64,000 nucleotides of DNA from Selaginella moellendorffii (Eukaryota > Plantae > Lycopodiophyta): positions 883,702 through 947,701 of the forward strand of contig NW_003314291.1 in assembly GCF_000143415.4 (NCBI RefSeq). The letters are read 5' to 3'. Position 1 is the stretch's first letter. Every line of letters begins with the position of its first letter. The notes beneath the pieces are model-generated. The model searched no databases and was not told the origin of the DNA. It saw nothing but the letters and a program-made list of their open reading frames with translations. The position numbers and the translations under genes are program-made. This document shows, one piece after another, positions 22,422-53,864 of the stretch.

Positions 22422-23553
22422 TGTAGCACATATGGTTTTGACCCTTTATCCTATGGTGATTTACCAAAGGATAACACCGCGAAGCGGAACCTAAACCCTC
22501 TTTATGCCATGTGATACATGCCACATGTCATCTGCCACATGTCCAAAGGACAGTGGTGTGGAACCCAAGGTTCAGGGCCTTGGGCCACTGAACGAAGGAA
22601 CGATGCCAAACTCCCAAGCATGGAGCCAAGGAGTGACGGAACCGAACTATAGAGCAACTCTCGAACATATAGCCTAAGGAGTGAAGGGATAGGAGCCTGG
22701 AGCGACTTGGAACAGTCCTAGAACAACTAGCATCCCAATGCCAAGACCAACACGCAAAACAGAGCCAAACGAAGTCTAGTGCTATTTCAACATACTGGTG
22801 GCCTAACACGAGGATATAGGTACTCCACCAATTAGCATGGAATGGAATTTGGGCTTAGACCCAAGCTGGACACAGAACAAATACAGGCACGCAAGCGGGA
22901 GCTAGACTATGCCTCAGGTTGGTTGGCCATGCCTGACCTACCCACTATCCCTACTATACATTTGGAAACCCCCCCTTGAGGAACACACGCTTTGGTCTTT
23001 CACCCCAAGCCTCCCTTAGTATCAAGAGTTAGTCTCTGGGACAAACTCGAAATTTACTAAATATGGAATGGTGTTAGATTGCAAATTTGGACACGAGACG
23101 AACACCATTGTGTTCAGGCCGACCTCTACATTTCATAGATATGCCAAATGAGCAAATCTGAACACTTTCCATAAATAGCATTTGGGACCGAATTGAGACT
23201 AACACAAAGAGCATGATAGCAAGGGTGTTTGGCAGACACAGTAAGCTATCATCTAGCAATATTGAGGGACCAAGCTCAATATCGCGGGGGTTCCCAACAC
23301 TAGCAAGTGCAAGTCAATGAATGAGTTTCTCTAACCAAGTCAAGTATGCTTGACTAAATAGACACTTAGGAATTCCTTCCTTATGCTCATCTGGTCAAGT
23401 GCACATGTGAAGATTAGTTTCTTAACTAGCTTAGGCGGAGACTAATAACGGGTTCAGCAATACCGACCTCCTGCCATCGTGGCAGTAAGGTAAGAGTGTC
23501 TGTAAGGACTAGCCGATAGGTAACTTTCGATACCCGAAGTCACATTCGCGACA
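22422..23553 (-). repeat. 3' LTR of element A
   Basis: Direct repeat of 41570-42600; reverse complement of the element C LTRs. Confidence 0.88.
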
Positions 23554-25484: not shown

Positions 25485-26632
25485 TGTAAGGAACCAACTC
25501 GCCGAGGTGTCGTAGGCTAAAGGAACCCCGAAAGCATGACCAAAATGACAAAGAGTTCATCGGATGGGACCAAGTCGAAGATCGAGTCCAAGACCGACTC
25601 TGAGACCGAGTTCGAGATAGAGTTCAGAATTGAGTCCGAGGCCGACTCAGGGACCGAGTTCGAGACCGAGTTTGAAACGGAGTCCGAGATCCGAAATCGG
25701 GTCCGAGACCGAGTCCGAGGTCGAGTCCAAGGTCGGGTCCGAGATCGGGTTCGAGATCGAGTCCAAGATCGAGTTCGAGACCAAATCAAAAATCGGATCC
25801 GAAATCGAGTCCGAGATCGAGCTACAGACTGAGTCCAAATACTAATACGGGTCAAGGGGTGAAAGCCCAAAGTGTGCGTCTCCCAGGGGGGAGGGGGGGC
25901 TGCAGGGGGTTCCAAAAGTATAGTAGGGATAGTGAGGTCTAGGAACCAATTTTGAAGGGACTCTCCAGTGGGGCTTCCAAACCGACTTGAGGTTGAGACT
26001 GGGACCGAGGGGCCTTGGGTGGGAGTGAGTATGGACTTGGTTGGTGCCGAAGGGGCCATCCAAGGAAGTGCTCAAGAGCATCTCCCACTCCCGAAAGGGA
26101 AACTGACTGCGGTGCTCCCGGCTCATGTGGAGTGGTGCCCCACTTGAGTACCATGTGGCTCATTGGTCCTCGCCCTTCCTAGGGGCTTGGGCCTTCCTTC
26201 GGGATGGAAATGGGGGGGTAGAAGTACCCATACCGAGCTGTTAGGCCACAGTGTTTCGCCCCGGCGTCCTGAAGCAAGTGTTGCACCCAAGACTTGGGAT
26301 TTAGAGGGTCCCATGATCAAGTCTTGTGGTACCAAGGGGTGTTAGGAACCTGGAGGCTTGGTGTGCTTGGCTGCTTGTGCCTGCGGGGAGTGTAGCCAAA
26401 CCTTAAGTCCAGTCTAACCCGGGGAGGGGGATTGGGAGAGATTGGGAATCCGTGGATGGATGGCTAATGCTCCGTTGCTCGTGCAATGAGTAGCTAAAAC
26501 CAAGTAGGACCAAGTAGGAGTTGGTACCATAGGCAGGAACCTTGGCGAGGGAACTTAGCAAAAGCCAAGGCAGTGTCGGACGGATAGACGAGGTAAGCTG
26601 GCAAATTGTAAAGGAACAATTTGTGGCTTACA
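25485..26632 (+). repeat. 5' LTR of element B, containing a hexamer (GAGWCC-like) minisatellite at ~25575-25835
   Basis: TGTAAGGAACC...GGCTTACA; matches the split 3' LTR. Confidence 0.95.
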
Positions 26633-26691
26633 ATTTGGTATCGGAGCCTTTTCCTCAGTTCTAGCGAAGGATAGAGGCGGATTGCTGGGAG

Positions 26692-29600: not shown

Positions 29601-31406
29601 TTGCGGTGGTCAAGGCACTCAAGGAGTGGCAACACTACTTTGGGAGACACTTCAAGGTTTACACGGACAATGTGGCAACGAAACACTTCTTGTCATAGCC
29701 CGACCTAAGGGGAAAACAAGGTCGGTGGGCCAATGCTTTGGCCGAGTTTGATTGCGAGATTCTGTACAAGCCTGGGAAGAGCAACATCATGGCAGATGCG
29801 CTAAGTTGAAACGTGAGCTTGAAGTTGGCAATATCCAGCATGATAGCAACCTTTTGGGATGATGTGCGGACCGCATATAAGAACGACGGTCTAGCACAAG
29901 AAGTGTTGCTGAGGAATCTAGAGGCACGGGAAGCTCACCAGAGAGGTGAGCTGCCAACGGAAGAGAAAACAGGCTATGTGGAACACAACGGACTCATATA
30001 TTACAAGCAAACGAGGGTGTATGTTCCAGAAGGGGAACTAAGAAAGGTAGCCTTAGAAGAGTGTCATGATGGACCTCTTGCGGGACACGACGGAGTGCCC
30101 AAGACAATGGTCTTACTCAAGAGGAAGTATCACTAGCCAGATATGGCTAAGGACGTCCAAGATTATGTAAAGACATGTCCAACATGTTAGTAGGTCAAAG
30201 CCATGACTAAGGCTAGTGGGGGCTTGTTGCAAAGCATCCCAATTCCAGATTGTCCGTGGAAATGTCTTACGATGGACTTCATCACGCGACTACCCCCAAG
30301 CAAGGGGTTCAATGTGATATTCATGGTGGTGGACCGATTTTCGAAGATGGCACATTTCATACCCACCACAACAAAAGTGGATGCGGAAGGGGTGGCGAAG
30401 CTGTTCTTTGAATAAGTGGTTCGAGTGCGGGGAAGGCCAGAAGAGATTATCTCAGATCGAGATAAAATCTTCACCAGTAGGTTCTGGAGAACCCTCCTGG
30501 AACAGTATTGCACCAAGTTGAAATTTAGCACAGCCTATCACCCACAGACAGGTATAGGGTATTAAGTCAAGTTGATGGCACTAACACTTCTTGACAGACG
30601 AACAAACAGAAAGGGTGAATAGGCAGCTGAAGGATTATTTGCGATGCTATGTCTCGGGAGACCAGACCGATTGGGTAAGTCATTTGGGACTTGCGGAAAT
30701 GTGTTATAACAACTCACCACATTCGAGTATCGGGGTGAGTCCATGGGAAGTCATCAATGGGCGACCTATTGAAGGTCCTGTGGAGCTCGGTGTGGCCGAA
30801 TATCATGGAGAGTTATCCGTAGTGGAGGCATTCACGGCGAAAAAACTCAACATTTGGAATCTAGTGAGGGATTCCTTGGAACGAGCTCAACAAAGGCAAA
30901 CCAAGTACGTGAACCGGAAGCGTCGGGATGTAGAGTTCCAAGCTGGAGAGAAGGTGTGGCTGATCACCAAAAACCTCAGGCTACCAAGTGGGATCAGCCG
31001 GAAGTTGACCCAAAGGTAAAAATGCATGTATTCCATAAATGAGATTGAGGCACGAATTGGTAAAGTAGCTTACCGTTTCTGACTTCCTCGAGAGATGGGG
31101 AAGATGCACCCCATGTTCCACGTGAACTTACTTAAGCCGTACTTTGAGGATCCGCTTCACAAGGACCAAGTAAGGCCTTTATCTAAGGTTATCCAAGGGG
31201 AAGAGGAATACGAAGTCGAGGCCATCCTCAATGCGCGCAAGAGCAAGCAACAAGGACGCGAGGTGAGAGAGTTCCATGTGAAGTGGAAAGGATTTCCACA
31301 CTGCGAAGCGACATGGGAACCGGAGGAGAACCTAACGAACGTGCGAGATTTAGTGGAGGAATTTCTGCAAGGCAGAACTCTATGTACTTATGTAAAGTTC
31401 AATTAA
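26692..31406 (+). pseudogene. gag-pol of chromovirus B, with multiple stops and frameshifts
   Basis: Gag capsid region, damaged knuckle CYNYGEVGHFSREC, protease [17 protein letters not shown], RNase H ETDASDF, integrase H-H-C-C / MDFI / SDRD, chromodomain YEVEAIL...VKWKGFPHCEATWEPEENL. Stops at 27496, 27883 and others. Confidence 0.95.
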
Positions 31407-32226
31407 AAGTATCAATTGGTGAAGTTGAGCAATGGCATATATTGGGACCCGAAGGCACGCCGAAGGTAAGCTAATTAGCATGGGTTAGTTAGGTCGACCA
31501 GGCGTAGGGAGCTACGCCCGACTCCCTGCAGGGATGTCGAATCCGTAAACGTATTCTACGGAGGTTGGGTTTGAGTCCCAACCCCCTAGTAAAGCAAGGC
31601 TGGGTTCAAGTCTTGACCCCATAATAGGGCGTGGTGAGGTGAGGAGTATAGGGACACCTATATTCTGTTGTCATGGGCTCTTGGCCAGAGAAGCTAACTT
31701 AGGCACACCGCTAAGTGGGGGGATGCCCCCGGAGACATGGTCAACAAGTCGTAGGATCAAAAAGAGAGACGTTCGATGTGGGCATCGAACTTCTTCTGTG
31801 GGTGGTGGAGTTGTAAGGAACCAACTCACCAAGGTGTCATAGGCTAAAGGAACCCCGAAAGCATGACCAAAATGACAAAGAGTTCATCGGATGGGACCAA
31901 GTCGAAGATCGAGTCCAAGACCGACTTTGAGACTGAGTTCGAGATAGAGTCCGGAATCGAGTCCGAGGCCGACTCGGGGACCGAGTTCAAGACCGAGTTC
32001 AAGACCGAGTTTGAGACGGAGTCCGAGATCCGAAATCGGGTCCGAGACCGAGTCTGAGGTCGAGTCCGAGGTCGGGTCCGAGATCGGGTGCGAGATCGAG
32101 TCCGAGATCGAATCCGAAATCGGATCCGAAATCGAGTCCAAGATCGAGCCAGAGACTGAGTCCAAATACTAATACGGGTCAAGGGGTGAAAGCCCAAAGC
32201 GTGCGTCTCCCGCGGGGGGGGGGGGG

Positions 32227-35200
32227 TGTCGCGCATGTGACTTTAGGTATCGAAAGTTACCTGTCGACTAGTCCTTATGGACACTCTTACCTTACTGCCA
32301 CGATGGCAGGAGGTCGGTATTGCTGGTTCCCTTTATCAGCCCCTCTTGTTCAAGTGTTAGTTTACTGGGCTTAGCACCTGTACTTAGCCAGATGGACATA
32401 AGGTAGGAACTCCTATGTGTTTCTAGCTGAGCATACTCGGCCTGGCTCTTAGTTCTCTTTTGCTCTGTCTTGCACTGGTTTGACAAGAACCCTCGCGTAT
32501 TGAGATTGGTCCCTCAATATTGCCGGATGATAGCTTACCGTGTCTGCCAAACACCCTCGCTATCATGCCCTTTGTGTTGGTCTCATTTCGGTCCCAAATG
32601 CTATTTATGAAAAGTGTCAAGATTTGCTCATTTGGCATATCTACAGAATGTAGAGATCGTCTTGAACACAATGTTTCAAGCTTGTCCCAGAGACTAACTC
32701 CTGATACTAAGGGAGGCTTAGGGTGAAAGCCCAAAGCATGTGTTCCTCAAGGGGGGGGGGGGGGGGGGGGGGATATGGGGGGTTCCAAATGTATAGTAGG
32801 GATAGTGGGTAGGTCGGGCATGGCCGACCAACCTGAGGCATAGTCTAGCTCCTACTTGCGTGCCTGTCCTTGTTATGCGTCTGGCTTGGGTCTAAGCCCA
32901 AGTTCCATTCCATGCTAGCTGGTGGAGTACCCATGTCCGCACGTTAGGCCACCGGTGTGCCGAAATAGCGCTAGACTCTGTTTGGCTCCGTTTTGCATGC
33001 TGGTCCTGGCATTGGGATGCTGGTTGCTCCAGGACTATTCCATGTCGCTCCGGGCTCCTATCCCTTCGCTCCTTGGGCTTTATGCTCGGGAGTTGCTCCA
33101 TGGTTCGGTTCCATCACTCCTTGGCTCCATGCTTGGGAGTTTGGCACCGTTCCTTCGTTCAGTGGCCCAAGGCCCTGAACCTCGGGTTCTTATGGACACG
33201 TGGCATGTGACACATGGCATCTATCACGTGGCACAAAAGAGGGTTTAGGTTCCGCTTCGTGGTGTTATCCTATGGTAAATCACCATAGGATAAAGGGTCA
33301 AAACAACGTGCGCTACATTTGGTATTAAAGGATGAGTCTCAGCGAGTACTATTCAATGAGATTGGGCAACTAGTCTTGTTGCATACGCAAAGATGAAAAC
33401 GATGATCCGAGTGGGTACACATTTGGTGCAAAGGGTTCACATTCGTTCCTTGGGTATGGATTTGGTTACCTTGTTGTACCTTATGATGTGAGCTTGCTCT
33501 TGGGCTCACAAGAGGGATTGAGTGTTCCGTTCACACGAGTTTGTGCTTGGGCTCGTGAGTAAGGCTCATTAGCAACTCAAGGTTACATTTTGAGTTGGCA
33601 GGATTAATGTTAGCCTATCGGTGGTTCCATGAGTTGTTCCTTGTACTTTGGGTGAAAGCAAACTTCCCTGAGTTTGCTATGAGTGGCAAATAGGCTGGTC
33701 CGTAGCTGTTTAGCACGGCACTAGTGGATCCTTCCTAGGCATGGTTACAAGTGGATTAATCAAGACTGTAGGGATTAGTCTATTGGTTCAGGTAGTCATT
33801 GCTGTGCTCTCTCATAAACTTTTCTTGGATTGGACTAAAGGCAGTGCGAAAGCAAGCTTGAGGTTTAGTCAAAGATGAGACCGAAAAGAGAGTCATCGGG
33901 GACAAATGATCAAATACGTAAATCATTTTCTCTTCTTGGAGAGATGATTTGCAACAAGGTGTTGACTCATTGCTCATGTTCATATTATGCAATCAAGATT
34001 CCTTACCTTGATGCATCTTGGAGATGATGGTCTTACAAATGGTGAGTTATGGGATGGATAGTGGTGAAACACTATACCATTTTGTCTAGGCTTGCTATTG
34101 GAAGACTTGGGTTGCAATGTTCAATTCTTTGCCAGAGAACCTTGCTATTGCCCTTTGAATAGCTTGGTGTTGGATTAGTTTTGAGTTTGGTCGGAAAGAG
34201 AGTGGCATGAGCTTGTCCGTGTTGTGTACAAAAGTTAGTGGTGTTAGGTGTTGTAAATCTCTATTGATAGAGTGTGGCATTTATGTTGCATTTTGTCAAA
34301 TTGAGTTGACACTTGATATTCACATAAACCTTTGTAGTAGTGACATTGGCATTGCTCATATTGTTGCTTGATTGATGATCAAGTCATTATGATTTCTATA
34401 TCATACCCATGTGATAGTGAGCAATGTGTTTACAAAGTTGCTTAGGTAAATGATGATCAACCCCAAAGTGGTTGATAGTGAAGCTAGTCTACTTGCATAA
34501 AGTAGCATTGTAGTAGCTTTGACTGGATTCTCGATGGTGGTCCATTATGCTAAGCTTAAGTTGGTTCCTTGTTTCCTTGAGTTTGCCCACTAACGTGTTG
34601 GAAAAGGGTTGTAACATTCATTTACTATAACTCGTCGGTTGATCCGTTAACACTTGGAGTAGATTATTGGATGGAGACAATGTGCAGTTGATGCATTGAC
34701 ATCACTAACACTTGTGTTAGTAGAAGTGGCATTGTTATTTTAAGTGATGAGGAAGTTTCCTTAGAGCTTGATTTTCCATATCATTTTTCTTGTTAATGTT
34801 TTGGCTTCACATTAGATTTTGAAGGTGATTGAAGAAAAGTGTTAGTGCAATGTGGATATCCAAAGATGTGGTCTTCGTGATCAAGCCTTGGATGTTCCAT
34901 TTGCATTTTATGGATGTCAGTGTTAGATGTCGAAAATATGGGCAAAAAGATGTTCGATGCTTAAGCATGCTATAGGTCTTGAGAATTTGTGTTGAGGTGA
35001 GCCTATGTGAAGTTGTTAAGTAGGAGGAAGTTGGTTGAGTCTTGAAAGTTTGCATTCCTGGACTGAGAGCCATTCTTTCTCTAGGATGGAAAATTTTCCA
35101 CAAATTTTCTTAGACTTTTCCAATGGCTGATCTATTATCACTTTGTCCGAAAACCATTCCGTTTTTGTAAGCCTGTACAAACTAGTGAAGGGTTGGAGTT

Positions 35201-38200: not shown

Positions 38201-39439
38201 GTGTGAATACCGTGAACTTTTTCTAGAGTTGTTTCCTTGGCGGTATTCTAGACTCGAGTATGCATCGACGAGGACGTCGATCTTCCCTAGGGGGAGAGTG
38301 TCGCGCATGTGACTTCAGGTATCGAAAGTTACCTGTCGACTAGTCCTTACGGACACTCTTACCTTACTGCCACAATGGCAGGAGGTCGGTATTGTTGGTT
38401 CCCTTTATCAACCCCTTTTGTTCAAGTGTTAGTTTACTGGGCTTAGCACCTGTACTTAGCCAGATGGACATAAGGTAGGAACTCCTATGTGTTTCTAGCT
38501 GAGCATACTCGGCTTGGCTCTTAGTTCTCTTTTGCTCTGTCTTGCACTGACTTGACAAGAACCCTCGCGTATTGAGATTGGTCCCTCAATATCGCCGGAT
38601 GATAGCTTACCGTGTCTGCCAAACACCCTCGCTATCATGCCCTTTGTGTTGGTCTCATTTCGGTCCCAAATGCTATTTATGGAAAGTGTCCAGATTTGCT
38701 CATTTGGCATATCTACGGAATGTAGAGATCGTCCTGAACACAATGGTGTTCGTCTCGTGTCCAAATTCGCAATCTAGGGACATTCCATATTTAGTAAGTT
38801 TCGAGCTTGTCCCGGAGACTATCTCTTGATTCTAAGGGAGGCTTAGGGTGAAAGCCCAAAGCGTGTGTTCCTCAAGGGGGGGGGGGGGGGGGGGCTATGG
38901 GGGGTTCCAAATGTATAGTAGGGATAGTGGGTAAGTCGGGCATGGCCGACCAACTTGAGGCATAGTCTAGCTCCTGCTTGCGTGCCTGTCCTTGTTTTGC
39001 GTCCAGCTTAGGTCTAAGCCTAAGTTCCATTCCATGCTAGCTGGTGGAGTACCCATGTCCTCACATTAGGCCACCGGTATGCCGAAATAGCACTAGACTC
39101 TGTTTGGCTCCGTTTTGCATGCTGGTCCTAGCATTGGGATGCTGGTTGCTCCAGGATTGTTCCATGTCGCTCCGGGCTCCTATCCCTTCGCTCCTTGGGC
39201 TTTATGCTCGGGAGTTGCTCCATGGTTCGGTTCCATCACTCCTTGGCTCCATGCTTGGGAGTTTGGCACCGTTCCTTCGTTCAGTGGCCCAAGGCCCTGA
39301 ACCTCGGGTTCTTATGGACACGTGGCATGTGACACGTGGCATTTATCACGTGGCACAAAAGAGGGTTTAGGTTCCGCTTCGTGGTGTTATCCTATGGTAA
39401 ATCACCATAGGATAAAGGGTCAAAACCACGTGCGCTACA
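32227..39439 (+). mobile_element. Element C: second copy of the A family (non-coding LTR element), inserted into the poly-G tract of B's 3' LTR
   Basis: LTRs 32227-33317 and 38299-39439 (TGTCGCG...GCTACA); degenerate PBS TGGTATTAAAG; PPT AGGGGGAGAG; poly-G on both flanks; ~5 kb T/G-rich interior without long ORFs. Confidence 0.93.
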
Positions 39440-41569
39440 GGGGGGGGGGGGGCTGTAGGGGGTTCCAAAAGTATAGTAGGGATAGTGAGGTCCAGGAACC
39501 AGTTTTGAAGGGACTCTTTAGTGGGGCTTCTAAACCGACTTGAGGTTGAGACTGGGACCGAGGGGCCTTGGGTGGGAGTGAGTATGGACTTGGTTGGTGC
39601 CGAAGGGGCCATCCAAGGAAGTGCTCAAGAGCAGCTCCCACTCCCGAAAGGGAAACTGACTGCGGTGCTCCCGGCTCATGTGGAGTGGTGCCCCACTTGA
39701 GTACCATATGGCTCATTGGTCCTCGCCCTTCCTAGGGGCTTGGGCCTTCCTTCGGGATGGAAGTGGGGGGGTAGAGGTACCCATACCGGGCCGTTAGGCC
39801 ACGGTGTTTCGCCCCGGCGTCCCGAAGCAAGTGTTGCACCCAAGACTTGGGATTTAGAGGGTCCCATGATCAAGTCTTGTGGTACCAAGGGGTGTTAGGA
39901 ACCTGGAGGCTTGGTGTGCTTGGCTGCTTGTGCCTGTGGGGAGTGTAGCCAAACCTTAAGTCCAGTCTAACCCGGGGAGGGGGATTGGGAGAGATTGGGA
40001 ATCCGTGGATGGATGGCTAACGCTCCGTTGCTCGTGCAGTGAGTAGTTGAAACCAAGTAGGACCAAGTAGGAGTTGGTACCATAGGCGGGAACCTTGGCG
40101 ATGGAACTTAGCAAAAGCCAAGGTAGTGTCAGACGGATAGACGAGGTAAGCTGGCAAATTGGAAAGGAAAAATTTGTGGCTTACAAATGCCTCAACCTCA
40201 CATCTTCTCCATCCAACAATCTACTCCAAGTGTTAATGGATAAACCAATAAGCCATAGCAAGCGATTGCTATAACCCTTTCTAACACCTTATGGGCAAAC
40301 CCAAAGAACTAAAAAACCAACTTAAGCTTAGCATAATGGACCACCATCAAGAATCCAGTCAAAGCTACTACAATACTACTATATGCAAGTAGATTAGCTT
40401 CACTATCAACCACTTTGGGGTTGATCATCATTTAACCAAGCAACTTCGTAAACACATTACTCATTATCACATGGATATGATATAGAGTCACAATGAATTG
40501 ATCATCAATTGAGCAACACCACGAACAATACCAATGTCATTACTTCAAAGGTTTATGTGAGCATCAAGTGCCAACTCAATTTGACAAAATGCAACATAAA
40601 TGCCACACTCCACCGATAGAGTTTTATAACACTGAACACCACTAACTTTTGTTCACAACATGGACAAGCTCATACTACTCTCTTTCCGACCAAACTCAAA
40701 ACTAATCCAACACCAAGCTACTCAAGGAGCAATGGCAAGGTTCCCCGGAAAAGAATTGAGCATTGCAACTTGAATCTTCTAATAGCAAGCATAGACAAAA
40801 TGGTATAACACTTCACTGCTATCTATCCCATAACTCACCATTTATAAGATCATCATTTCCAACATGCATCAAGGTAGGGACTCTTGTTTGCATATTGTGA
40901 ACATGAGCAATGAGTCACACCTTGTTACAAATCATCTCTCCAAGAAGAGAAGATGATTTACGTGTTTGATCCTTCGTCCTTGATGACTCTCTTTTCAGTC
41001 TCATCTTTTTGACTAAACTTCAACCTTGCTTTCGCATTACCTTCAGTCTAATCCAAGAAAAGTTTATGAGAGAGCACAACAATGGTTACTTGAATCAATA
41101 GACTCATCCCTGTAGTCTTGATTGATTCACTTGCAATCATGCCTAGGAAGGATCCACTAGTGCCGTGCTAAACAGTTACGGGCTAGCCTATTTGCCACTC
41201 ATAGCAAACCTAGGGATAGGTTTACTTTCACCCATAGTACATGGAACAACTCATGAAACCACCGATAGGCTAACATTAATCCTGCCAACTCAAAGCGTAA
41301 CCATGAGTTGCTAATATGCCTCACTCATAAGCCCAAGCGTAAATTTGTGCAAAACAATACAACTTAAATCCATCCTATAAGCCCAAGAGCAAGCTCATAT
41401 CATAAGGTACAACAAGGTAACCATATCCACACCCAAGGAAAGATTGCGAAGTCTTAGCACCCAAACATGTACCCACTCGGATCATCGTTTTCATCTCTGC
41501 GTATGCAACGAGACTAATTGCCCAATCTCATTGAATAATACTCGTTGAGACTCATCCTCTGATACCAAA

Positions 41570-42600
41570 TGTAGCGCACATGGTTTTGACCCTTTATCCT
41601 ATGGTGATTTACCAAAGGATAACACCACAAAGCGGAACCTAAACCCTCTTTATGCCACGTGTCATCTGCCACGTGTCCAAAGGATAGTGGTGTGGAACCC
41701 GAGGTTCAAGGCCTTAGGCCACTAAACGAAAGAACAGTGCCAAACTCCCAAGCATGGAGCCAAGGAGTGACAGAACCGAACCATGGAGCAACTCCCGAGC
41801 ATATAGCCCAAGGAGCAAAGGGATAAGAGCTTAGAGCGACTTGGAACAGTTCTAGAGCAACCAACATCCTAATGCCAGGACCAACACGCAAAACGGAGCC
41901 AAACGGAGTCTGGCGCTATTTCAGCATACCAGTGGCCTAACACAAGGATATAGGTACTCCACCAGCTAGCATGGAATAGAATTTGGGCTTAGACCCAAGC
42001 CGGATGCAGAACAAAGACAAGCATGCATGCGGGAGCTAGATTATGTTTCAGGTTGGTCGGCTATACCCAATCTACCCACTATCTCTACTATACATTTGGA
42101 ACCCCCCACAGCCCCCCCCCCCTGCTTTGGGGCTTTGGGCCTTCACCCCAAGCCTCCCTTAGTATTAGAAGTTAGTCTCTGGGACAAACTCGAAACTTAC
42201 TAAATATGGAATGGTGTTAGATTGCAAATTTAAACACGGGACAAACACCATTGTGTTCAGGCCGATCTCTATATTCTGTAGATATGCCAAATGAGCAAAT
42301 CTGGACACTTTCCATAAATAGTATTTGAGACCGAATTGAGACTATGATAGCAAGGGTGTTTGGCAGACATGATAAGCTATCATCTAGCAAGTATGCTTGA
42401 CTAAATAGACACTTAGGAATTCTTTCCTTATGCTCATCTGGTCAAGTGCACACGCAAAGATTAGTTTCTCAACTAGCTTAGGCAGAGACTGATAACGGGT
42501 TCAACAATACCAACTTCCTGCCATCGTGGCAGTAAGGTAAGAGTGTTTGTAAGGACTGGCTGACAGGTAACTTTCGATACCTGAAGTCACATTCGCGACA
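41570..42600 (-). repeat. 5' LTR of element A
   Basis: Followed on the minus strand by TT-TGGTATCAGAG; has internal deletions relative to 22422-23553. Confidence 0.88.
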
Positions 42601-45790: not shown

Positions 45791-46617
45791 CTAGACTCTG
45801 AATCCTCGGCTGTTACGTCGCCCGCGAGCCTTCTCAAACTTGCGCCCCTTGGAGCGCACGTACGGCTTGGTGTGGCTGTGTGGCACACCAGGAGCCGGCC
45901 CAAAGTGCTTCACGGCCTCCCGAGCGGACTTGCGACCCCTCAAAAGTACCTGGGCAAAGCAACAAGAAAACTAAGAAACAGGGAGGGACTTTACGACTGA
46001 TCGCTGCTTACCGTGTTGCATCCAGTGGGTGCCAGGAGCGCGAGCTCGTCAAAGGTGAGGCATTTCCCTCCGGCGTTGGTGATCCTGGCGCGGGCAGTCC
46101 GGGTGAAGCGCAGAGCCACCACTGTCATTGCGGGAACCGTCGCGAGTCTAGGATCGTCGGTGACCGTTCCAACGAGGACAGCGATCTTTCCCGACTGTGT
46201 CAGAAGGAAAAAGAAAAACCAATCAAGAAGTGATGCGAGCAATCGGAAAGCTCACCTTCTTTTCCATGCTAGCGGAGAGGCGGGAGAGGGACACTGGCGG
46301 CTGGTTGGTTTTGCTCATGAAGAGCCGCTTGAGGATCACAGCGTTGAATTTGCTGTTGGTCCTTCTGACCAAGAAGCGGTAGAGCTGACAGAGAGGGAAT
46401 GGAAAAGAAAATGCGTGAGAAATCGGGCAACCGCTATAGATCCAATGCCAAATCCCACGCACTCACCTTGACGAGCAGCTTGAGGTAGACATTGTCACTC
46501 TTGGGGGCTGTCCGCTTGGTCTTCTTGTTGCGCCCGCCGGCTTCGATGTCGATACCCTGCAGCAAAGCGAGCACCGTGAGACGAGGCCATCCATCGCAGC
46601 ACGGATCCACGTACCAT
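45791..46617 (-). CDS. RPL18: 60S ribosomal protein L18 (eL18); the first coding exon is the ATG alone
   Basis: M|[30 protein letters not shown]|[27 protein letters not shown]...[11 protein letters not shown]...[16 protein letters not shown]. Confidence 0.97.
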
Positions 46618-46664
46618 AGCGCTGCTCCTCCTCCTCCCTGGCGGCTGAAAAGCCCTAGTCCCCG

Positions 46665-46676
46665 CAAAACCCTAAA
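46665..46676 (+). promoter_or_regulatory. Telo-box (AAACCCTA) upstream of RPL18
   Basis: AAAACCCTAAA ~50 bp upstream of the ATG; telo-boxes are typical of plant ribosomal protein promoters. Confidence 0.6.
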
Positions 46677-46829
46677 TCTAGCCCCAGTCCGGTGTTCGAT
46701 TCCATTGGATAGCGTTAAAAAGAATATTCTTTTTCTGCCAAGGTTCAAATCCAGCCAGGAACCTTATGGTCGTGGGTTCGAACCCTTTCCACGACATTTT
46801 ATTATTTAGGGTATTAAGTCTTGGAATAT

Positions 46830-48250
46830 GCTTTCAAACTAAAAGAAAAGCTGGAGAATTTATCGTCGCTTGCCACCCCCAAGAAGGAGACTTGCATCAA
46901 GCACAATGCAGAGAGAGCGCTGCAAAGCTCCTCGCAGTGTCCGAGTTTGTCGCAAAGTCTACGCCCCGGCGCTGGAGCTCAGTGCATGGAATACATGGGA
47001 CTCCGCCGAGGTGAACGAGACGCTGTTCCTGGTGCTCGCAGTTTGCTACATTGCTCGCCTCTGCGCCTCTAGTGTCGAGATGCTGCGACGCAGCTGGATT
47101 GTATGGTTGATTTCGCCCGCCAGGAGCTGCTCTGGTCGGTTGGAATCCATAGACTTTCGTCGCTGGACGCAGCTAAGCAAGATGAGCGAGCACTTGGAGC
47201 TACTTTGGGCAAAGTTTTGCGAAAACAGAAACATCCAAGGTTTGTGTTTGTCTCATGTTCTTTCTTTTCTTTTTCACGTTTTCTTGGTTCGAATGGCCGA
47301 AAAACCAGCACGCAACGAAATCAATATGGATCTTTCCGCTCCACCCCCGCACCCGAACCGGAAATTCAGATGTAAGAAACCATCTGTTGCTTCAGTTCTC
47401 TCATCAAATAATAGCGAAAAGATGACGAGTAAACCAGGCACAAGGAATACACAAATACCCTCTGGTTATGGTGTTGTGGCTACTTTTCTCAAGGCCGATT
47501 TCTTTCTAACACTCCCGGTGGACAGGCTGGTGCAGACGACGGAGTCAGACAGGCTTATGCACAGCTTGCACGACATCCACTCGAGCCACCATGAAATGCC
47601 CTCTGTCTCTGCTGGTCAAGGAGCTCGTCCTGCTGCTCCAAGGGATCGAGAACAACAAGTTGCTGCGATCACTCGTCATGGAGACGCCACCCCTGTCCGT
47701 GCTGCCGCACCACCAACGCCTTGCACATCTGGCTTGGACGCTACGACCTCCGAATCTATCACCACCACAACTTAACGTGTAAGTTGTTGCCTCTCAAGTG
47801 TTTATCTTTTTAAAAGCTTGTGTTCGGTACACAGGATGCTCCAAAGCAGGAGGAGGAAAAGGATAATGTTTTCTTTTATATGATCAGAAGTGTGAGCTTA
47901 CATCTTCGTGTTTGCACCACACAGGTGTTGCGGGATGGCTTCCACAAGGAGCGCACCCCATCTCTGATCGAACAGACCCGAGACGTGACACTCATGACAG
48001 CTTGTGGTACGTGATTGGATTCTAAAGCTGCTTGACTTACTTTTGTCTTCTGAGCTTATTCACATGTCTACAAAAGCCTCCAGACACACCGATGTGGCGT
48101 GCCTCTAGGAAGTATGTTGGCATTGCAGGGAAGTTCGAACACCCCGTGAGTCTGTGCATAGAACATTCACAAAGACTCTAGGCTTGGAGACCAGGATGGC
48201 AGTTTTGTAGGTAGAAGCTCGAGAGTTGGATGTAGAAAAGTCCAAAATTG
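46830..48250 (+). pseudogene. Decayed paralog of the 18876-20748 gene
   Basis: Shared peptides WDS.E..ETLFLVLAVCYIARL, SEHLE.LWAKFC, LKADFFLTLPV.RLV, VKELVLLLQGIENNKLLRSLV, F.KERTPS.IE.T and LGLET, spread over different frames with deletions. Confidence 0.8.
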
Positions 48251-48505
48251 AGCTTAATTTACGGGTGAAATTTCAATGGTCAACATTTATGGACTGTCAT
48301 TGACTGTTATTGACTATGTTCACTTGGCATTGACTCTGCCAGAGTTTTTGAGAGTCTTTTGAAGCGAGCTTTCGACGACGTTCTTTTGAGGCGAGCTCGT
48401 CTGCTCGTACGGCCGTGGTACAGGATAATCGGATCTTGGAGAAAGACTAGGGCAGTCGCGAAGCCTCGGACTTCTTGGAGAGAGGTAGAACTTCTTGACT
48501 CATTC

Positions 48506-49417
48506 TTATTTCCATCTCTTGGATTCCCACGTCTCGGCCAATGCCACTGCTTGCTCGAGCGTCTGGGGATTGTGATCATCCACGCCCATTCGGACGCTAC
48601 ACTTGAGGCCGTGCACGTAGTACGCCACCTTGTCCTCATCGCTCAATCCGGGCAGCCGCGACACCAGCTTGCAAAACCGTGAGCTATACTCCCTCACCGA
48701 CTTGAGCTGCCGGAGATCCATGAGCGCGAACTTGGCCTCGCGCTGGTAATTCGCGGGCATGAAGAACTTGAGGAACGCGTCCCGGAAATCCTCCCAGCTG
48801 CCCACCATGGCGGAGCTGGAGCTGGAGTTCTTCCACCAGAAGTAGGCCGCGTCCTTGAGATGGTAAGTCGCGATCAACACTTTCTCGTCCGGGCTAGCCT
48901 GGCCGATTCGAAAGTAGCTCTCCACCTTGTGGAGCCACTCCCAGATCACCTCGGCGTCGCGCTCGCCGCGGTAGATCGGGATCCTTGGCGGTTGGTGGTG
49001 CTCCTGATGGATGCGCGAATCGAAGGAGCCATTGGAGCTTTGATCCGAGGGGCTGCTGCCGCCCTTCTCCTGGTCGTGGAAGCTGTAGCTCTCGATGGTC
49101 TCCTCTTGCAAATCTGGGTATGGAGGAGGAGGTGAAGGAGCCACATTGGATTCTCTGTGCTTGGCCATGGTGTCGAGATTGGAGACGAACACCTTGGTGG
49201 TGTGCTCAAAGAGATTGGAGCTAGAAGTACCTCGCGGGATTGGAGAGAGCGACGAGGATGGCTGCTTGCTCCTCGCGGTGGCACCGGCGGCGACCTTGAG
49301 GCTCAGCACCTCCGCCGAGAGCCGCGCCAGGAACACATTGAGCTCCGCCATGACGCCCTCGAGCGATTCCAGCCGCCGCTCCAGCTCCTCCTGCCGATCC
49401 TCGCTGGTGGGTTTCAT
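48506..49417 (-). CDS. Stand-alone Ty3/gypsy Gag (capsid)-derived protein, 303 aa from the first ATG; candidate domesticated gag
   Basis: Intact intronless ORF: N-terminal coiled coil, Ser/Pro linker with PPPPYPDL, then a retrotransposon-gag capsid region (YRGERDAEVIWEWL..VESYF...LKDAAYFWW...SWEDFRDAFLKFF...LRQLKSVREYSSRF...YVHGL...PQTLEQAVALAE) that aligns by eye with element B gag. No LTR, PBS or pol seen nearby. Confidence 0.85.
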   Translation of the reverse strand: MKPTSEDRQEELERRLESLEGVMAELNVFLARLSAEVLSLKVAAGATARSKQPSSSLSPIPRGTSSSNLFEHTTKVFVSNLDTMAKHRESNVAPSPPPPYPDLQEETIESYSFHDQEKGGSSPSDQSSNGSFDSRIHQEHHQPPRIPIYRGERDAEVIWEWLHKVESYFRIGQASPDEKVLIATYHLKDAAYFWWKNSSSSSAMVGSWEDFRDAFLKFFMPANYQREAKFALMDLRQLKSVREYSSRFCKLVSRLPGLSDEDKVAYYVHGLKCSVRMGVDDHNPQTLEQAVALAETWESKRWK

Positions 49418-49610
49418 CACGGGATCCACCCAAGCTGCGCGGATCGAGACGATTCGGAGATGAGCGATGATGATCCACGCACAAAAGCCCCAAATGTGCT
49501 ATTTGAAAATGGATAGTACTGTCGGTGCGGTGATGGCGATGAATCGCCAGCCCGCCAGCGCGATCTGATTCAAATACTTTCCCCATAATCACCGCGCTAT
49601 GTATTCCAAC

Positions 49611-49670
49611 GCGCGGTACAGCGCGGTAACTGCAGCCGTACCGCGCGGTACCGCGCGGTACAGTGCGGTA
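49611..49670. promoter_or_regulatory. 10-bp-period GCGCGGTAC array containing a perfect 24-bp palindrome (49638-49661)
   Basis: GTACCGCGCGGTACCGCGCGGTAC; four GTAC cores and several CGCG boxes, ~200 bp upstream of the gag ORF. Function inferred only. Confidence 0.5.
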
Positions 49671-50590
49671 GCACGCGCTAACTTAACTTCCAGGTTTGGT
49701 CGGCCAATCCACATCAGTCGCCAGATCTCTGCACGTTGCTGGTTTGATTTTTGTTTCCTCGATCAGTACACACGTGATTGCTGCTGCTAGATCACTCGAT
49801 CACCACTGCATCACTGGAAAAGAAAACAAAGAAAGAAACGATAAAACAGAGTAAAGACACATTTGTTTTGCTTGTGTTCTTGTCTGGATCACAGAGCACA
49901 AACAAAAAGCTCTCAGACGCAAGCAGAGCGCGAGACTTCTCTCTCTTTCGCGATCGATCCCGCTTTCCAAAACTCTCCTTTCCCAAACTCTAGCCAAAAA
50001 TTCCGCGGGAGAGACAGGCATTGAAGACACGACATGAACAGTCATGGGATCCATCAACCGTAGCGTCATACGTATGCTCTACCCAGGAGAGTCTTGATCC
50101 ATCCAATTCTATAATAGAAGTTCCAAGCTAAGAGTCCGAGAATGAGAGGGAAAAGATAAAAGCGTAGATGTGATTGAAGCGTTTTGGAAAGGAATCCTCA
50201 TTGTTTCTGAGTGCGCTCGCACGAGAGTTACTCTTCTTGTTGCTTTGTGTGACTAGTATGTATGGTCGCAATACGAAGCCTCTTCCACGGGCTCTCAAAG
50301 TCAAGCCTCCAGACTCGATCAAGATTGCTCTAAACGCGGAGTTGATCGAATCGTTTTACAGTTCCTCTTCTTCTTTTTCCGGTCCTTGATTCCCATCCCA
50401 ATCGTTGTCACTTCTTCCTCCTGCGCGATCCGATCGATCCTTAGCTGGAGAGCATTCTCCAGAGGAAGTCTCTTTTCTCCTTCCAAACTCCCCAATATCT
50501 GCAGGAAATACCGTCCTTTTGATGGAGATCTTCCCTCTTCTTCTCTAGCTCGCGGTGATTCGAGCGAGCGAGAGAAAGGAGCAAGAGGAA

Positions 50591-51725
50591 ATGGAGAAGA
50601 TCACGGCCCTGGTGCTAGCGACTGCGGTGGTGATAGCCTGGATCGCCCCGCCCGCGCGAGGCGAGGTGAGGAGCTTCCAGTGGAAGGTGGAGTACATCTA
50701 CTGGGCTCCGGATTGCGTGGAGACGGTGGTGATCGGGATCAATGGGCAGTACCCGGGGCCGACGATCCGCGCCACCGCGGGCGACACCATCCGCGTGGAG
50801 CTGGAGAATGGAATGAGCACCGAGGGCCTCGCCATCCACTGGCATGGAATTCGCCAGGTTAGAGCAAAGAGTTTCCTCTCGATTGGATCATCGATTTCCA
50901 GAGAGAAGAGAGTGGTGTTCTAAAGATGATGATGATGATGATGATCTCGCAGATTGGAACTCCCTTCTACGATGGCGTCCCATTCGCATCCCAATGCCCG
51001 ATCAATCCCGGCGAGACATTCACATACGAGTTCGTGGTGGACAGAGTGAGTGAGTGATTGATTGAGCTCGAAGATCAAGCACTGATTTTTCTATCCATTT
51101 TTTCCTCTGATCGCTGGCAGCCAGGAACTTACTTCTATCACGGGCACTATGGCTTGCAGCGCTCGGCCGGGCTGTACGGATCTCTCATCGTCGACCCCGT
51201 GCCGAGCGACGCCGTACCATTCACTTACGATGGCGAGCTCAGCATCGTCCTCAACGACTGGTGGCACCGATCGATCTACAGCCAGGAGACGGGCCTGTCG
51301 CAGCTGGGCAGCGCGTTTCGATTCGTGGGCGAGCCCCAGGTAAGCAAACATCGCGATCGCGACAGGGGGATCGATCGTTTATCGGTCGATCGATGCGAAA
51401 AGTTTCGAGCTAAAACGAATCACACTGTTTTGCTGGCGCAGTCGCTGCTGATCGAGGGTCGCGGTCGCTACAACTGCTCATTGATTCCCGCGGCGCCATC
51501 GTCTCCACCCCTGTCGGGCGATGTAATGTCGTGTAACAGCTCCCGGCCGCAGTGCGCGATGCATGCCCTCGCCGTACGGCCGGGGCTGACGTACCGACTG
51601 CGCATCGCCAGCGTCGCCTCATTGTCATCGCTCAACTTTCTCCTTGAGGTACGGTACCCCATCTTCCATAGCTTCGTACTCTCATCCGTACATACCTTTC
51701 GCCATTTCGTCTCAACACCCTTTTC

Positions 51726-51763
<38 letters not shown>

Positions 51764-52775
51764 TCTCGTGGATTGAGCTTGACATGGATGAATTTTTGCG
51801 CTGCGCGATCAGGGTCACAACATGACGCTGGTGGAAGCCGACGGCCACTACGTTACACCCGTGGAGATCTCCAACCTCGACATCTACTCGGGCGAGACAT
51901 ACTCGGTGCTCGTCACCGCCAACCAAGATCCATCGCGCAGCTACTGGGCGGCGGTGAATGTGCGCGGGAGGAGGCCGGCCACTCCTACAGGCCTCGCGAT
52001 CCTGAGCTATGGCGATGGAAGCTCGAGCTCGGCGCCACCGAGCACTCCCTCGCCGCAGAGCCCCGCCTGGGACGACTTCGCCTACAGCGTTGCCCAGGCC
52101 AGGCGCGTGGTCTCGCGGCCGGGCTTCCAGATCCCTCTCCCGGAGCGAGCAAACGTTAGACTGATGCTCCTCTCGACCCAGAACCGGATCGATGGCAAGA
52201 TCAAGTGGGCGATCAACAACGTCTCCTACGTCCCGCGCGCCACGCCCGTGATCGCGGCCTTCCAGTTCAACCTCACCACCGCCTACGATCTCGCCGCCTC
52301 CCCGCCCCGCGATTTCTCCAGGGGCTACAAGATCCGGAACGCGCCCCCGAATCCCAGCGCCATCCAGGGGAGCGGCGTCTACACCTTCCGCCACAACGAC
52401 GTGGTGGACGTGGTGCTCCAAAACTCCAACACGCTCGTCCCAAACAACAGCGAGATCCATCCCTGGCACTTGCACGGCCACGATTTCTGGGTTCTTGGGT
52501 ATGGCAGCGGGATCTACCGTCCGCACCGCCACGCCAGCACGCTCAACTTCGTCAACCCGCCAATGCGCAACACGGTCGCGGTGTTCCCGTACGGGTGGAC
52601 GTACCTCCGTTTCCGCGCGGACAACCCCGGGGTGTGGGCGTTCCATTGCCACATTGAATCACATTTCCATATGGGAATGGGGGTCATGTTTGCCGAGGGC
52701 GTTGACCGCCTCCCTCGAATCCCGGCACAAGCTCTGGGCTGTGGCTACACCAAGGCGCTCTTCACAGCGCCCTAA
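50591..52775 (+). CDS. AAO: L-ascorbate oxidase (multicopper oxidase), 5 exons
   Basis: Signal peptide; [12 protein letters not shown]; copper motifs [22 protein letters not shown] and [16 protein letters not shown]. Confidence 0.93.
51729..51759. repeat. (CT)n microsatellite in an ascorbate oxidase intron
   Basis: About 15 CT units. Confidence 0.9.
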
Positions 52776-53597
52776 TTCGAAGTTTAGATTCTGCCAACTT
52801 GGTTTCTATGCCAAAATGAAGTGCTTAGTAAATTGGTTGAACTGGTCCAGGGAGGAGGAGTCTGTGGTGCTGCTAGATGAGGACCTTTCATCTCTGCTGT
52901 AACTACTTGCTTCAATGTGGATATACCACCAACCTAATTCACTTCTAATATGATTTCTTTAATGCATCCCAAGATACATGCTTCCTGAAATCTATTTTAC
53001 TAGTGAAACTTCCAGTTATGAGATATTCCAAAATAGACGCTCAACTGGAGGCATGAGCCCACGTTTCAGTTGAACTTTTGCAGTTGGCCTTCAATATGCA
53101 ATATATTGTAAGTAAATTTTAGATTTATTGTAATTAATATATAATATAAAGTCTTAGGAATGGATTTTATTAAAAATGTTTATAATTTTTATAAAACCTT
53201 TCTAAACTCAAAATTTTTATAATATATTTTTTAAAAATAATATTAATTTTTTATTGAAAAACTAATAATTTGCTGCATGAATCATATTGAGATTTATTTA
53301 GGATAATATGTCTCATTATAAGAACAAAGAGTTGTAAGGATTTGAAATATAATAAACACTAGGATAAATGTGTGTAAGATTCTTAATAGCCACTTTTCCA
53401 CATCTTGATACAACTTTTAAGCACTAGATCACTATATATATCTGGCAATAACAGCATATTCCATATCAATTTCTCTGCTTTGAGCAACTATATTTAACAA
53501 AACTATCAATGATGTTCTCTTAACATGTTTTAAATCACTGTCATAGATCTCCCAAACTTGATGAATCTAGCTGATGTTACTATGGGTGATATAACGA

Positions 53598-53782
53598 GCA
53601 AGAACAATCGCGAGCTCAATCGCTCCTATCCAAAAACAAAGTTTTTAGCAGCTACAAAGCAAGAAAATAAACAGCAAGAACAATTGCGAGCTCAATCACT
53701 CCTGTCCAAGAACAAAGTTTTAGCAACTACAAAGGAAAAAAAAGAACGACCAAGAACAATCGCGAGCTCAATCGCTCCTATC
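53598..53782 (+). repeat. Tandem ~77-bp repeat, ~2.5 copies
   Basis: CAAGAACAATCGCGAGCTCAATCGCTCCTATC-type unit at ~53599, ~53675 and ~53751. Confidence 0.85.
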
Positions 53783-53864
53783 TGAGACATCATATGTGCT
53801 GCTCGCAAACATATTTGAGTCGTCTTTAAAACAGATGATCACTAGAGCTCGGCTATTTTTTATA

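What the first reader, a model, noticed from the sequence alone, without database searches (positions are those of the whole stretch)
48506..49417. Solo intact gag gene with Arc-like architecture: candidate domesticated retrotransposon capsid in a plant
Seen: an uninterrupted 303-aa ORF among host genes, consisting of a coiled-coil N-terminus (EELERRLESLEGVMAELNVFLARLSAEVLSLK), a disordered linker and a complete Ty3/gypsy capsid region that stops right after PQTLEQAVALAETWE. I see no CCHC knuckle, protease, RT, LTR, PBS or PPT. Its codons are GC3-rich like the neighbouring ascorbate oxidase, whereas chromovirus B in the same window is full of stops. Established: coiled coil + capsid without nucleocapsid is the layout of vertebrate Arc, a domesticated gag that forms RNA-carrying capsids. 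Inference: a host-retained gag that could form particles, move RNA or restrict retrotransposons.
Basis: partly seen in the sequence, partly recalled or inferred. Interest (0 to 1): 0.88.

Follow-up and report, generated by a model that had tools for sequence, protein, structure and literature searches.

The report
Old, intact, solo gag gene in Selaginella
A spikemoss (Selaginella moellendorffii) gene encodes only the capsid part of a Ty3/gypsy retrotransposon protein, and a 35-base relic beside a duplicated neighbour gene suggests it has stayed intact at this locus far longer than chance allows, so the plant probably keeps it for its own use.

Summary
Window 48506-49417 (-) is an uninterrupted 303-codon ORF in Selaginella moellendorffii scaffold GL377595.1. 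It has three parts:
- a five-leucine zipper helix
- a low-confidence linker
- a complete two-lobed Ty3/gypsy capsid (Pfam 2.9e-18; AlphaFold pLDDT 95-98; TM 0.71-0.75 to the dArc and Ty3 capsids)

No zinc knuckle, protease, RT, LTR, TIR or tRNA-iMet PBS lies nearby. LTR pairs and PBS-like sites are easily found in the transposon nest 6 kb away.

New evidence concerns its age. The last 11 codons plus stop (35 nt, 31/35 identical) survive as a relic beside a paralogue of the neighbouring gene about 60 kb away, on both haplotypes. So gag was already next to that gene before the duplication (p=0.19 overall, about 0.3 in introns). A neutral ORF would survive that span with probability at or below about 1e-3.

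GC3 (0.80) and CpG o/e (0.9) match the neighbouring oxidase, not the local transposon.

The "Arc-like" layout is not a host invention. The N-terminal helix is shared with angiosperm gag-protease proteins; only loss of the nucleocapsid is derived.

Orthologues, the gag allele, expression and genome copy number could not be tested. Verdict: probable co-opted gag, a new member of a known kind. Its function is unproven.

The parts
48506..49417 (-). Complete gag-only ORF: 303 codons plus a TAA stop at 48506-48508. It is annotated as a single-exon gene.
49277..49405 (-). N-terminal long helix, residues 5-47. It holds a leucine zipper (L12, L19, L26, L33, L40) and is acidic (pI 4.7). The motif is shared with angiosperm Ty3/gypsy gag-protease proteins.
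   Evidence: weak Pfam CLZ hit
48983..49276 (-). Ser/Pro/Gly-rich linker, residues 48-145. It is mostly low-confidence, with a weak second helix at 67-90 that also aligns with the gag-protease relatives.
48509..48982 (-). Two-lobed capsid (CA) domain, residues 146-303, with nine helices. The Pfam Retrotrans_gag core lies at 48602-48874.
48507..48541 (-). The last 11 codons of gag plus two bases of the stop. A 31/35-identical relic of this stretch lies about 100 nt 3' of the paralogous gene at L003 11727-11761. L002 has the same relic (the aligned part is 11725-11747) with a 10-bp deletion. This stretch serves as the age marker.
49611..49670 (.). Palindromic GC-rich tandem repeat (GCGCGGTACA/C, about 6 copies), 194-253 bp upstream of the gag ATG. 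It sits in the 1.17-kb head-to-head spacer shared with the multicopper oxidase gene. It may be a promoter element, but this was not tested.
46872..48236 (+). Context: the tail-to-tail neighbour, a copy of a gene family seen only in Selaginella (SELMODRAFT_416389). It carries many deletions relative to its paralogues. Its paralogues provide the dating argument.

Best explanation
This is a retrotransposon gag gene that the host has kept. It is the capsid-forming part of a Ty3/gypsy Gag, with an N-terminal leucine-zipper helix, a flexible linker and a two-lobed CA. It has lost the zinc-knuckle nucleocapsid, protease, RT, integrase and LTRs, and it sits as a single-exon gene between a multicopper oxidase and a lineage-specific gene in Selaginella moellendorffii.

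Shown: the anatomy, the fold, the absence of other element parts, the lack of close relatives in the protein databases searched, and a relic of its 3' end at a paralogous locus.

Inferred: because gag was already beside the neighbour gene before that gene was duplicated (p about 0.19 overall, about 0.3 in introns), the ORF has been held open by purifying selection.

Likely mode of action (inference, about 0.25 on its own): the protein self-associates through the zipper and the CA lobes. Lacking any RNA-binding module, it would act on capsid assembly. Most plausibly it co-assembles with, and poisons or modulates, Gag of resident Ty3/gypsy elements, as a restriction-type factor. Packaging RNA itself is less likely.
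For: Anatomy and fold:
- Intact 303-aa ORF with gag and Ty3_capsid domains.
- Its Pfam score of 66 bits equals that of intact element Gags (57-65 bits) and exceeds the broken local element (47 bits).
- The CA model has pLDDT 95-98. Foldseek matches dArc2 and dArc1 capsids at TM 0.75, Ty3 capsid at 0.71, plus PNMA2 and the PEG10 CTD.
- The query carries all 13 nearly invariant CA residues of the 126-sequence alignment.

No other element parts:
- No CCHC in any frame, although 102 of 151 relatives have one after CA.
- No protease or RT.
- No LTR or TIR. The same tool finds LTR pairs at 22-43 kb.
- No iMet PBS.

Uniqueness:
- Only the protein itself among proteins of 167-530 aa, and nothing at 87-276 aa.
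- The best non-self hit of 1.84 billion representatives is 31-37% identical and covers CA only.

Age:
- A 35-nt relic, 31/35 identical, lies collinear 3' of the paralogue at L003 and L002. The chance expectation is about 1e-9.
- The shared residues 294-303 fit the gag family profile at +9 bits, so the stretch is gag-derived and not host-derived.
- Paralogue divergence is p=0.19, and 0.28-0.31 in intron-like windows.
- Neutral ORF survival is at most 0.024 at 5% divergence and at most 6e-4 at 10%.

Composition: GC3 0.80 and CpG o/e 0.90 resemble the adjacent oxidase and a PPR gene. They differ from the local TE.
Against: - No orthologue or paralogue was seen in any other genome, so there is no dN/dS and no synteny test.
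- No allelic copy of gag, or of its neighbour SELMODRAFT_416389, is annotated. A locus about 60 kb away does have both haplotypes annotated. The gene could therefore be missing or unannotated on the other haplotype.
- There is no expression evidence.
- Genome-wide copy number could not be measured, and transposon ORFs may be under-annotated. For example, the local element's gag ORF is not on record.
- The age argument rests on one 35-nt relic. At 11% divergence it is lower than intron-level divergence: P(4 or fewer mismatches out of 35) is 0.009 if p=0.30 and 0.18 if p=0.19. A later short gene-conversion tract is not excluded.
- GC3 of host genes is heterogeneous (the ABC transporter is 0.45-0.50), and only one TE served as the contrast.
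- The proposed mode of action has no direct support.
Confidence: 0.58

Rival explanations
1. It is a neutral leftover of a dead Ty3/gypsy element. Deletions removed the LTRs and pol, and the gag ORF is still open only because the fragment is young or lucky. It has no host function.
For: - No orthologue, allele or expression evidence was obtained.
- The CA looks 'fresh': its 66-bit Pfam score equals that of intact element Gags.
- S. moellendorffii carries other Ty3/gypsy elements close by.
- Transposon ORFs can be missing from the annotation, so close genomic relatives may exist unseen.
Against: - The relic at the paralogous locus places gag before a duplication with p of 0.19-0.3. Neutral survival of the ORF over half that divergence is at or below about 1e-3.
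- No trace of LTR, PBS, CCHC, protease or RT remains, yet the ORF runs exactly from the N-terminus to the end of CA.
- GC3 of 0.80 and CpG o/e of 0.9 contrast with flanks at 0.46-0.50 GC and with the local TE.
Confidence: 0.22
2. It is a gag-only non-autonomous retrotransposon (TR-GAG type), or part of a larger mobile unit. It would still be a selfish element rather than a host gene.
For: It has a gag-only ORF. TR-GAG elements are described in plants, and S. moellendorffii was among the genomes screened in that study (PMC4350172).
Against: - TR-GAGs are defined by LTRs, PBS, PPT, a 5-bp TSD, length under 4 kb and at least two copies. No terminal repeats or PBS exist within +/-8 kb here.
- Host genes lie 270 bp from one end of the ORF and 1.17 kb from the other.
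- No second copy appears in the window, in L002 or L003, or in the protein databases.
- The described TR-GAG1 keeps a zinc finger. This ORF has none.
Confidence: 0.06
3. The final 10 codons and the stop come from host DNA (the antisense 3' UTR of the neighbour gene family). On this reading the 35-nt match marks a recent insertion breakpoint and not an old relic, so the age inference fails.
For: - Homology between the window and L003 runs from the family gene through its 3' UTR and ends exactly at 48541, inside the ORF.
- Nothing else of gag is detectable at L003.
Against: - Residues 294-303 match the gag family profile. Ala294 occurs in 115 of 123 relatives, Asp/Glu298 in 106 of 122, and positions 297 and 302 are aromatic. 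The total is +9 bits.
- phmmer alignments to relatives run to residues 298-303.
- The predicted last helix, 287-302, is continuous and of high confidence.
- No homology resumes on the far side of gag, as a simple insertion would predict.
Confidence: 0.08

Closest known systems
Arc (tetrapods) and dArc1/dArc2 (Drosophila), co-opted Ty3/gypsy gag genes
   Same: - Two-lobed CA fold: Foldseek TM 0.75 to the dArc2 and dArc1 capsids, with matches to the Arc CTD. Sequence E-values are 6e-4 to dArc2 and 0.017 to Arc.
- Like vertebrate Arc, it has no zinc-knuckle nucleocapsid.
- A helical N-terminal region precedes a linker and CA.
   Different: - Independent origin. The nearest relatives are plant Ty3/gypsy Gags at 31-37% identity. 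Arc matches only at the level of the general CA fold.
- The N-terminal zipper is inherited from the parental plant gag lineage and is acidic (pI 4.7). Arc's N-terminal domain is basic and binds membranes and RNA (my own knowledge, not tested here).
- There is no evidence of particles or RNA binding.
Plant co-opted gag genes Crtg8 (Athila-like) and Crtg11 (Del-like), Wang & Han 2021 (PMC8321522)
   Same: Ty3/gypsy gag-derived, stand-alone host genes in plants.
   Different: - Those genes are angiosperm or eudicot genes, defined by synteny across at least two plant families and by purifying selection.
- This one is in a lycophyte, is known from one species, and has neither criterion tested.
- The paper does not mention Selaginella or lycophytes.
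Truncated or gag-only proteins that antagonise capsid assembly: RTL8 versus PEG10 (PMC11684626), the Ty1 restriction factor p22 (PMC13709905), Fv1
   Same: A CA-containing protein without the RNA-binding and enzymatic parts, encoded in a genome that also carries related elements. This is the model for the proposed mode of action.
   Different: No functional data exist here. The papers were seen by title and abstract only. Fv1 is from my own knowledge.
TR-GAG non-autonomous LTR retrotransposons (PMC4350172)
   Same: Gag is the only ORF.
   Different: No LTR, PBS, PPT or TSD; no second copy seen; no zinc finger.

Membership tests
Ty3/gypsy (Metaviridae) Gag capsid superfamily | Sequence match to the Retrotrans_gag (PF03732) and Ty3_capsid (PF19259) profiles above their curated cut-offs | tested here: met
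   66.3 bits against a cut-off of 24.1, and 49.7 bits against 29.1
Ty3/gypsy (Metaviridae) Gag capsid superfamily | Two-lobed all-helical CA fold (NTD plus CTD) | tested here: met
   Nine helices at pLDDT 95-98. TM is 0.71 to the Ty3 capsid 6r24 and 0.75 to dArc 6taq and 6tap.
Autonomous LTR retrotransposon | Flanking LTRs with PBS and PPT | tested here: not met
   No direct repeats around the ORF. No tRNA-iMet PBS nearby. Positive control: LTR pairs and PBS-like sites are found in the nest at 22-43 kb. Only an iMet-type PBS was searched.
Autonomous LTR retrotransposon | Nucleocapsid zinc knuckle, protease, RT/RNase H and integrase downstream of CA | tested here: not met
   No CCHC in six frames of 46000-50600. 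tblastn with gag-PR and full polyproteins hits only CA here.
TR-GAG non-autonomous element | LTRs, PBS, PPT, 5-bp TSD, length under 4 kb | tested here: not met
   Definition from PMC4350172. No terminal repeats or PBS found.
TR-GAG non-autonomous element | At least two copies in the genome | not testable with these tools
   No plant genome collection is available. No second copy in the window or in L002 and L003, nor among annotated proteins.
Co-opted (domesticated) gag gene, criteria of Wang & Han 2021 | Orthologues in conserved synteny across species | not testable with these tools
   No other Selaginella genome could be searched. Protein databases give no relative above 37% identity.
Co-opted (domesticated) gag gene, criteria of Wang & Han 2021 | Purifying selection (dN/dS below 1) | tested here: inconclusive
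   No homologue is close enough for dN/dS. Indirect support: the ORF is intact although gag predates a duplication with p of 0.19-0.3.
Co-opted (domesticated) gag gene, criteria of Wang & Han 2021 | Loss of transposition hallmarks with an intact ORF at a fixed genomic site | tested here: met
   Fixation in the population and presence on the other haplotype were not tested.
Arc / dArc gene families (orthology) | Descent from the animal Arc co-option events, with closest sequence relatives being Arc genes | tested here: not met
   The closest relatives are plant Ty3/gypsy Gags. The Arc and dArc matches are weak, at E 6e-4 to 0.017.

The most novel reading that the evidence does not exclude
A lycophyte has independently co-opted a Ty3/gypsy Gag that assembles into capsid-like particles and moves RNA or protein between cells. 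This would be an Arc/PEG10-type system in a non-seed plant. The evidence does not exclude it, because the complete CA and the zipper are compatible with assembly. It gives no positive support, because there is no RNA-binding module and the N-terminus is acidic.
Probability: 0.06. Interest if true: 0.9.

Novelty: new member of a known kind. Interest (0 to 1): 0.6.

Why it matters
Co-option of retrotransposon gag genes is well documented in animals (Arc, PNMA, RTL/PEG10, SCAN). The one systematic survey found only four cases in plants, all in angiosperms (PMC8321522).

A gag gene retained in a lycophyte would extend the phenomenon to an early-diverging vascular plant lineage. It would also offer a compact test protein of 303 aa (zipper plus CA, no nucleocapsid) for asking what plant hosts use capsid proteins for, whether restriction of Ty3/gypsy elements or particle formation.

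The relic-at-a-paralogue argument is a way to date a solo TE gene inside a single genome when no orthologues are available.

Tried and rejected
1. Close relatives. A whole-protein search at 167-530 aa found only the protein itself. A CA-only search at 87-276 aa found nothing. The exhaustive representative search gave 6127 hits, all at 37% identity or less and covering CA only.
It was instead aligned with relatives that have long N-termini, and the helix motif is shared with them.
3. Structure without an alignment was poor (pLDDT 49.7), so that model was discarded. The model built with the alignment was used.
4. Allele hunt. The neighbour ORF was searched in the hope of finding the other haplotype. 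This found a paralogue instead (L002), whose true allele lies about 60 kb from gag on the same scaffold (L003). The allelic site of gag, expected near 35 kb on GL377635.1, could not be fetched.
5. I first suspected that the 1.4-kb repeat next to gag was an LTR or other TE. The three-way alignment shows conserved exon-like blocks, diverged intron-like blocks with GT..AG ends, and a shared stop codon. All the copies found lie within about 110 kb of one scaffold. It is a local gene family, not a TE.
6. I looked for more gag remains at L003 beyond the 35 nt. Weak collinear tblastn hits (for example residues 5-24, E 0.28) are noise. Nucleotide local alignment scores equal those of shuffled controls (z 0.3).
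7. No homology was found between the 5' flank of gag and L003 or L002.
8. A look-up of the local element's gag ORF, to see whether TE ORFs are annotated in this assembly, found it not on record.
9. Absence of Logan contigs carries no information about expression. None of the Selaginella proteins looked up (P0153, P0154, P0157) lists Logan among its sources either.

Full report
**What is there.**
- On the minus strand, an ORF runs from a GTG at 49429. From the first ATG at 49417 to a TAA at 48508-48506 it is 303 codons.
- An exact-sequence look-up shows it is an annotated single-exon gene of Selaginella moellendorffii, assembly GCA_000143415.2, scaffold GL377595.1. Window coordinate plus 883701 gives the scaffold coordinate.
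- Its neighbours are a three-domain multicopper oxidase placed head-to-head (window 50591-52775 +), a 266-aa gene without Pfam domains placed tail-to-tail (46906-47775 +), RPL18 (45791-46617 -) and an ABC transporter.

**Domains and fold.**
- Pfam gives Retrotrans_gag (residues 182-272, E 2.9e-18) and Ty3_capsid (148-295, E 4e-13). It also gives a sub-threshold SCAN hit on the C-lobe and a sub-threshold leucine-zipper hit at residues 6-39.
- Against PDB sequences, the best matches are the dArc2 capsid (E 6e-4) and the Arc capsid domain (E 0.017).
- A single-sequence AlphaFold model was poor.
- With a 126-sequence alignment of database relatives (A1), the model reaches pLDDT 95-98 over residues 141-303. 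It shows nine helices in two lobes, a long helix at 5-47 (pLDDT 83-92), and a low-confidence linker with a weak helix at 67-90.
- Foldseek places the model next to the dArc2 and dArc1 capsids (TM 0.75, rmsd about 3 A), the Ty3 capsid (0.71), PNMA2 and the PEG10 CA-CTD.
- Reading the sequence directly, Leu 12, 19, 26, 33 and 40 occupy one heptad position and L16, M23, L30 and V37 the other. This is a textbook zipper (heptad run of 10).

**What is not there.**
- No CCHC-type knuckle exists in any of the six frames of 46000-50600. By contrast, 102 of 151 relatives carry one, and relatives have a median of 95 residues after the CA end.
- tblastn with a gag-protease protein and a full Ty3/gypsy polyprotein hits only the CA here. 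Both cover gag-PR-RT-RH of the element at 27.1-29.8 kb.
- No direct or inverted repeats flank the ORF.
- The same tool recovers nested LTR pairs at 22.4-23.6/41.6-42.6 kb (88-93% identical) and at 25.5-26.2/31.9-33.1/38.3-39.7 kb (95-97% identical).
- tRNA-iMet-type PBS sites occur at 26636 (+), 45 bp before that element's gag, and at 41556 (-). None lies near the solo gag.

**The 'Arc-like' layout is inherited.** A subset of relatives has equally long N-termini.
- In alignment A3, the query's first helix (the motif L-E-x-R-h-x-x-h-E-x-x-h) and its second helix line up with those of proteins from Euphorbia peplus, Cucumis melo and Hibiscus trionum, and with unnamed contigs.
- These relatives continue into a CCHC knuckle, and those long enough also into an aspartic protease.
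- So the coiled coil plus linker plus CA is the parental Gag. The only derived feature is the end of the protein right after the last CA helix.
- The zipper segment is acidic (pI 4.7), the whole protein has pI 6.1, and there is no basic tract. Nothing in the sequence points to RNA binding.

**Uniqueness.**
- Among 5.8 billion clusters, the whole-protein search found only the protein itself, in a cluster of one member on one contig. The CA-only search found nothing.
- The exhaustive search of 1.84 billion representatives gave 6127 hits. The best non-self hit scores 94 bits at 31-37% identity, over CA only.
- The named hits that were looked up are angiosperm or fungal retrotransposon proteins.
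- Caveats: transposon ORFs may be unannotated in this assembly, and the genome itself could not be searched.

**Composition.**
- GC3 is 0.80 and GC2 is 0.43, against flanks at 0.46-0.50 GC. CpG o/e is 0.90.
- The oxidase exons have GC3 of 0.67-0.84 and a PPR gene has 0.80.
- The local Ty3/gypsy ORFs have GC3 of 0.54-0.57 and CpG o/e of 0.62-0.76.
- The ABC-transporter exons have GC3 of only 0.45-0.50, so this argument is supportive rather than decisive.

**Age, the main new result.** The tail-to-tail neighbour (46872-48236) belongs to a gene family seen only in Selaginella.
- The family has conserved exon-like blocks, diverged intron-like blocks and a shared stop codon.
- Other copies lie at window 18876-20610 (-) and at GL377595.1 about 993-995 kb (locus L003, SELMODRAFT_416404).
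- L003's allele on the other haplotype is L002 (GL377635.1, SELMODRAFT_424789). L002 and L003 are collinear and 97-98% identical.
- About 100 nt 3' of the stop of the L003 copy, collinear with the window, lies a 35-nt stretch 31/35 identical to window 48507-48541. That window stretch is the last 11 codons of gag plus two bases of the stop.
- Read antisense, the L003 stretch gives AETWDSKKWKY against AETWESKRWK-stop in gag. L002 has the same stretch with a 10-bp deletion.
- The chance expectation for such a match is about 1e-9.
- Residues 294-303 fit the gag family profile at +9 bits. Ala294 occurs in 115 of 123 relatives, Asp/Glu298 in 106 of 122, and positions 297 and 302 are aromatic. The shared stretch is therefore gag sequence, not host sequence read through.
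- Nothing else of gag survives at L003.
- The simplest reading is that gag already sat beside this gene when the window copy and the L003 copy were duplicated. Gag was then lost or cut off at the other locus.
- The two paralogues differ by p=0.19 in ungapped columns and by 0.28-0.31 in intron-like windows.
- A 303-codon ORF of this composition has 115 one-step paths to a stop. Under neutrality, the joint probability of no stop and no frameshift is 0.004-0.024 at 5% divergence and at most 6e-4 at 10%.
- The relic's own divergence is 4 of 35. That is compatible with p of 0.15-0.19 (P = 0.18-0.38) but low for p = 0.30 (P = 0.009). This is expected if the window side is constrained, but it leaves room for a later conversion tract.

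**What remains open.**
- Neither gag nor its neighbour SELMODRAFT_416389 has an annotated allelic partner, whereas the L003/L002 pair does.
- By collinearity, the allelic site should lie near 35 kb on GL377635.1.
- Orthologues, dN/dS, expression, methylation and genome copy number are untested.

**Verdict.** The best explanation (confidence 0.58) is a host-retained Ty3/gypsy gag that has lost its nucleocapsid, making it a new member of the known class of co-opted gag genes and the first candidate of this kind that I could find for a non-seed plant.
- The suggested mode of action is oligomerisation through the zipper and CA, with interference in or modulation of retrotransposon capsid assembly. 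This is inference by analogy with RTL8/PEG10 and Ty1 p22.
- Arc-like RNA transfer is not excluded but has no positive support.
- Rivals are a neutral relic (0.22), a host-derived terminus that would mean a recent insertion (0.08), and a TR-GAG-type element (0.06).

**Constraints.** The contig is from a plant, not from a human.

Noticed in passing
window 22422-42600: A nest of LTR retrotransposons. The outer LTR-like pair is 22422-23553 and 41570-42600 (88-93% identical), with a PBS-like site at 41556-41567 (-). Inner LTR-like repeats lie at 25556-26186, 31883-33053 and 38290-39739 (95-97% identical). A broken Ty3/gypsy gag-PR-RT-RH lies at 26692-31019 (+), with a PBS-like site at 26636-26647. 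The LTR-like repeats contain a run of 17 G at about 32753 and 38878.
   Followed up: partly
window 46872-48236 (+), window 18876-20610 (-), L003 9852-11625, L002 9852-11624: A multi-exon gene family seen only in Selaginella and without Pfam domains (SELMODRAFT_416389, 416404, 424789). It has three paralogous loci within about 110 kb. The window copy next to gag has many deletions that are not multiples of three relative to the others, so it looks like a decaying copy. Its annotated 266-aa model is therefore doubtful.
   Followed up: partly
window 49611-49670: A palindromic GC-rich tandem repeat (GCGCGGTACA/C, about 6 units) in the spacer between the divergently oriented gag and multicopper oxidase genes. 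It may be a shared regulatory element.
   Followed up: no
L003 174-1442 versus L002 1-2983: The two haplotypes differ structurally at one end of the loci. L003 carries a Ty3/gypsy RT/RNase H fragment (37% identical to a Lolium polyprotein), where L002 carries a malectin-like receptor kinase gene. Elsewhere the haplotypes are 97-98% identical, with stretches at 91-93%.
   Followed up: no
window 53591-53797: Three tandem copies of a 76-bp unit (78-89% identical) in a 32% GC stretch between the oxidase and the ABC transporter gene.
   Followed up: no
window 1906-1988 and 5692-5776: ARAGORN calls a tRNA-Leu (TAA) and a second tRNA-like sequence with an odd two-base anticodon. The second may be a tRNA-derived repeat or a pseudogene.
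   Followed up: no
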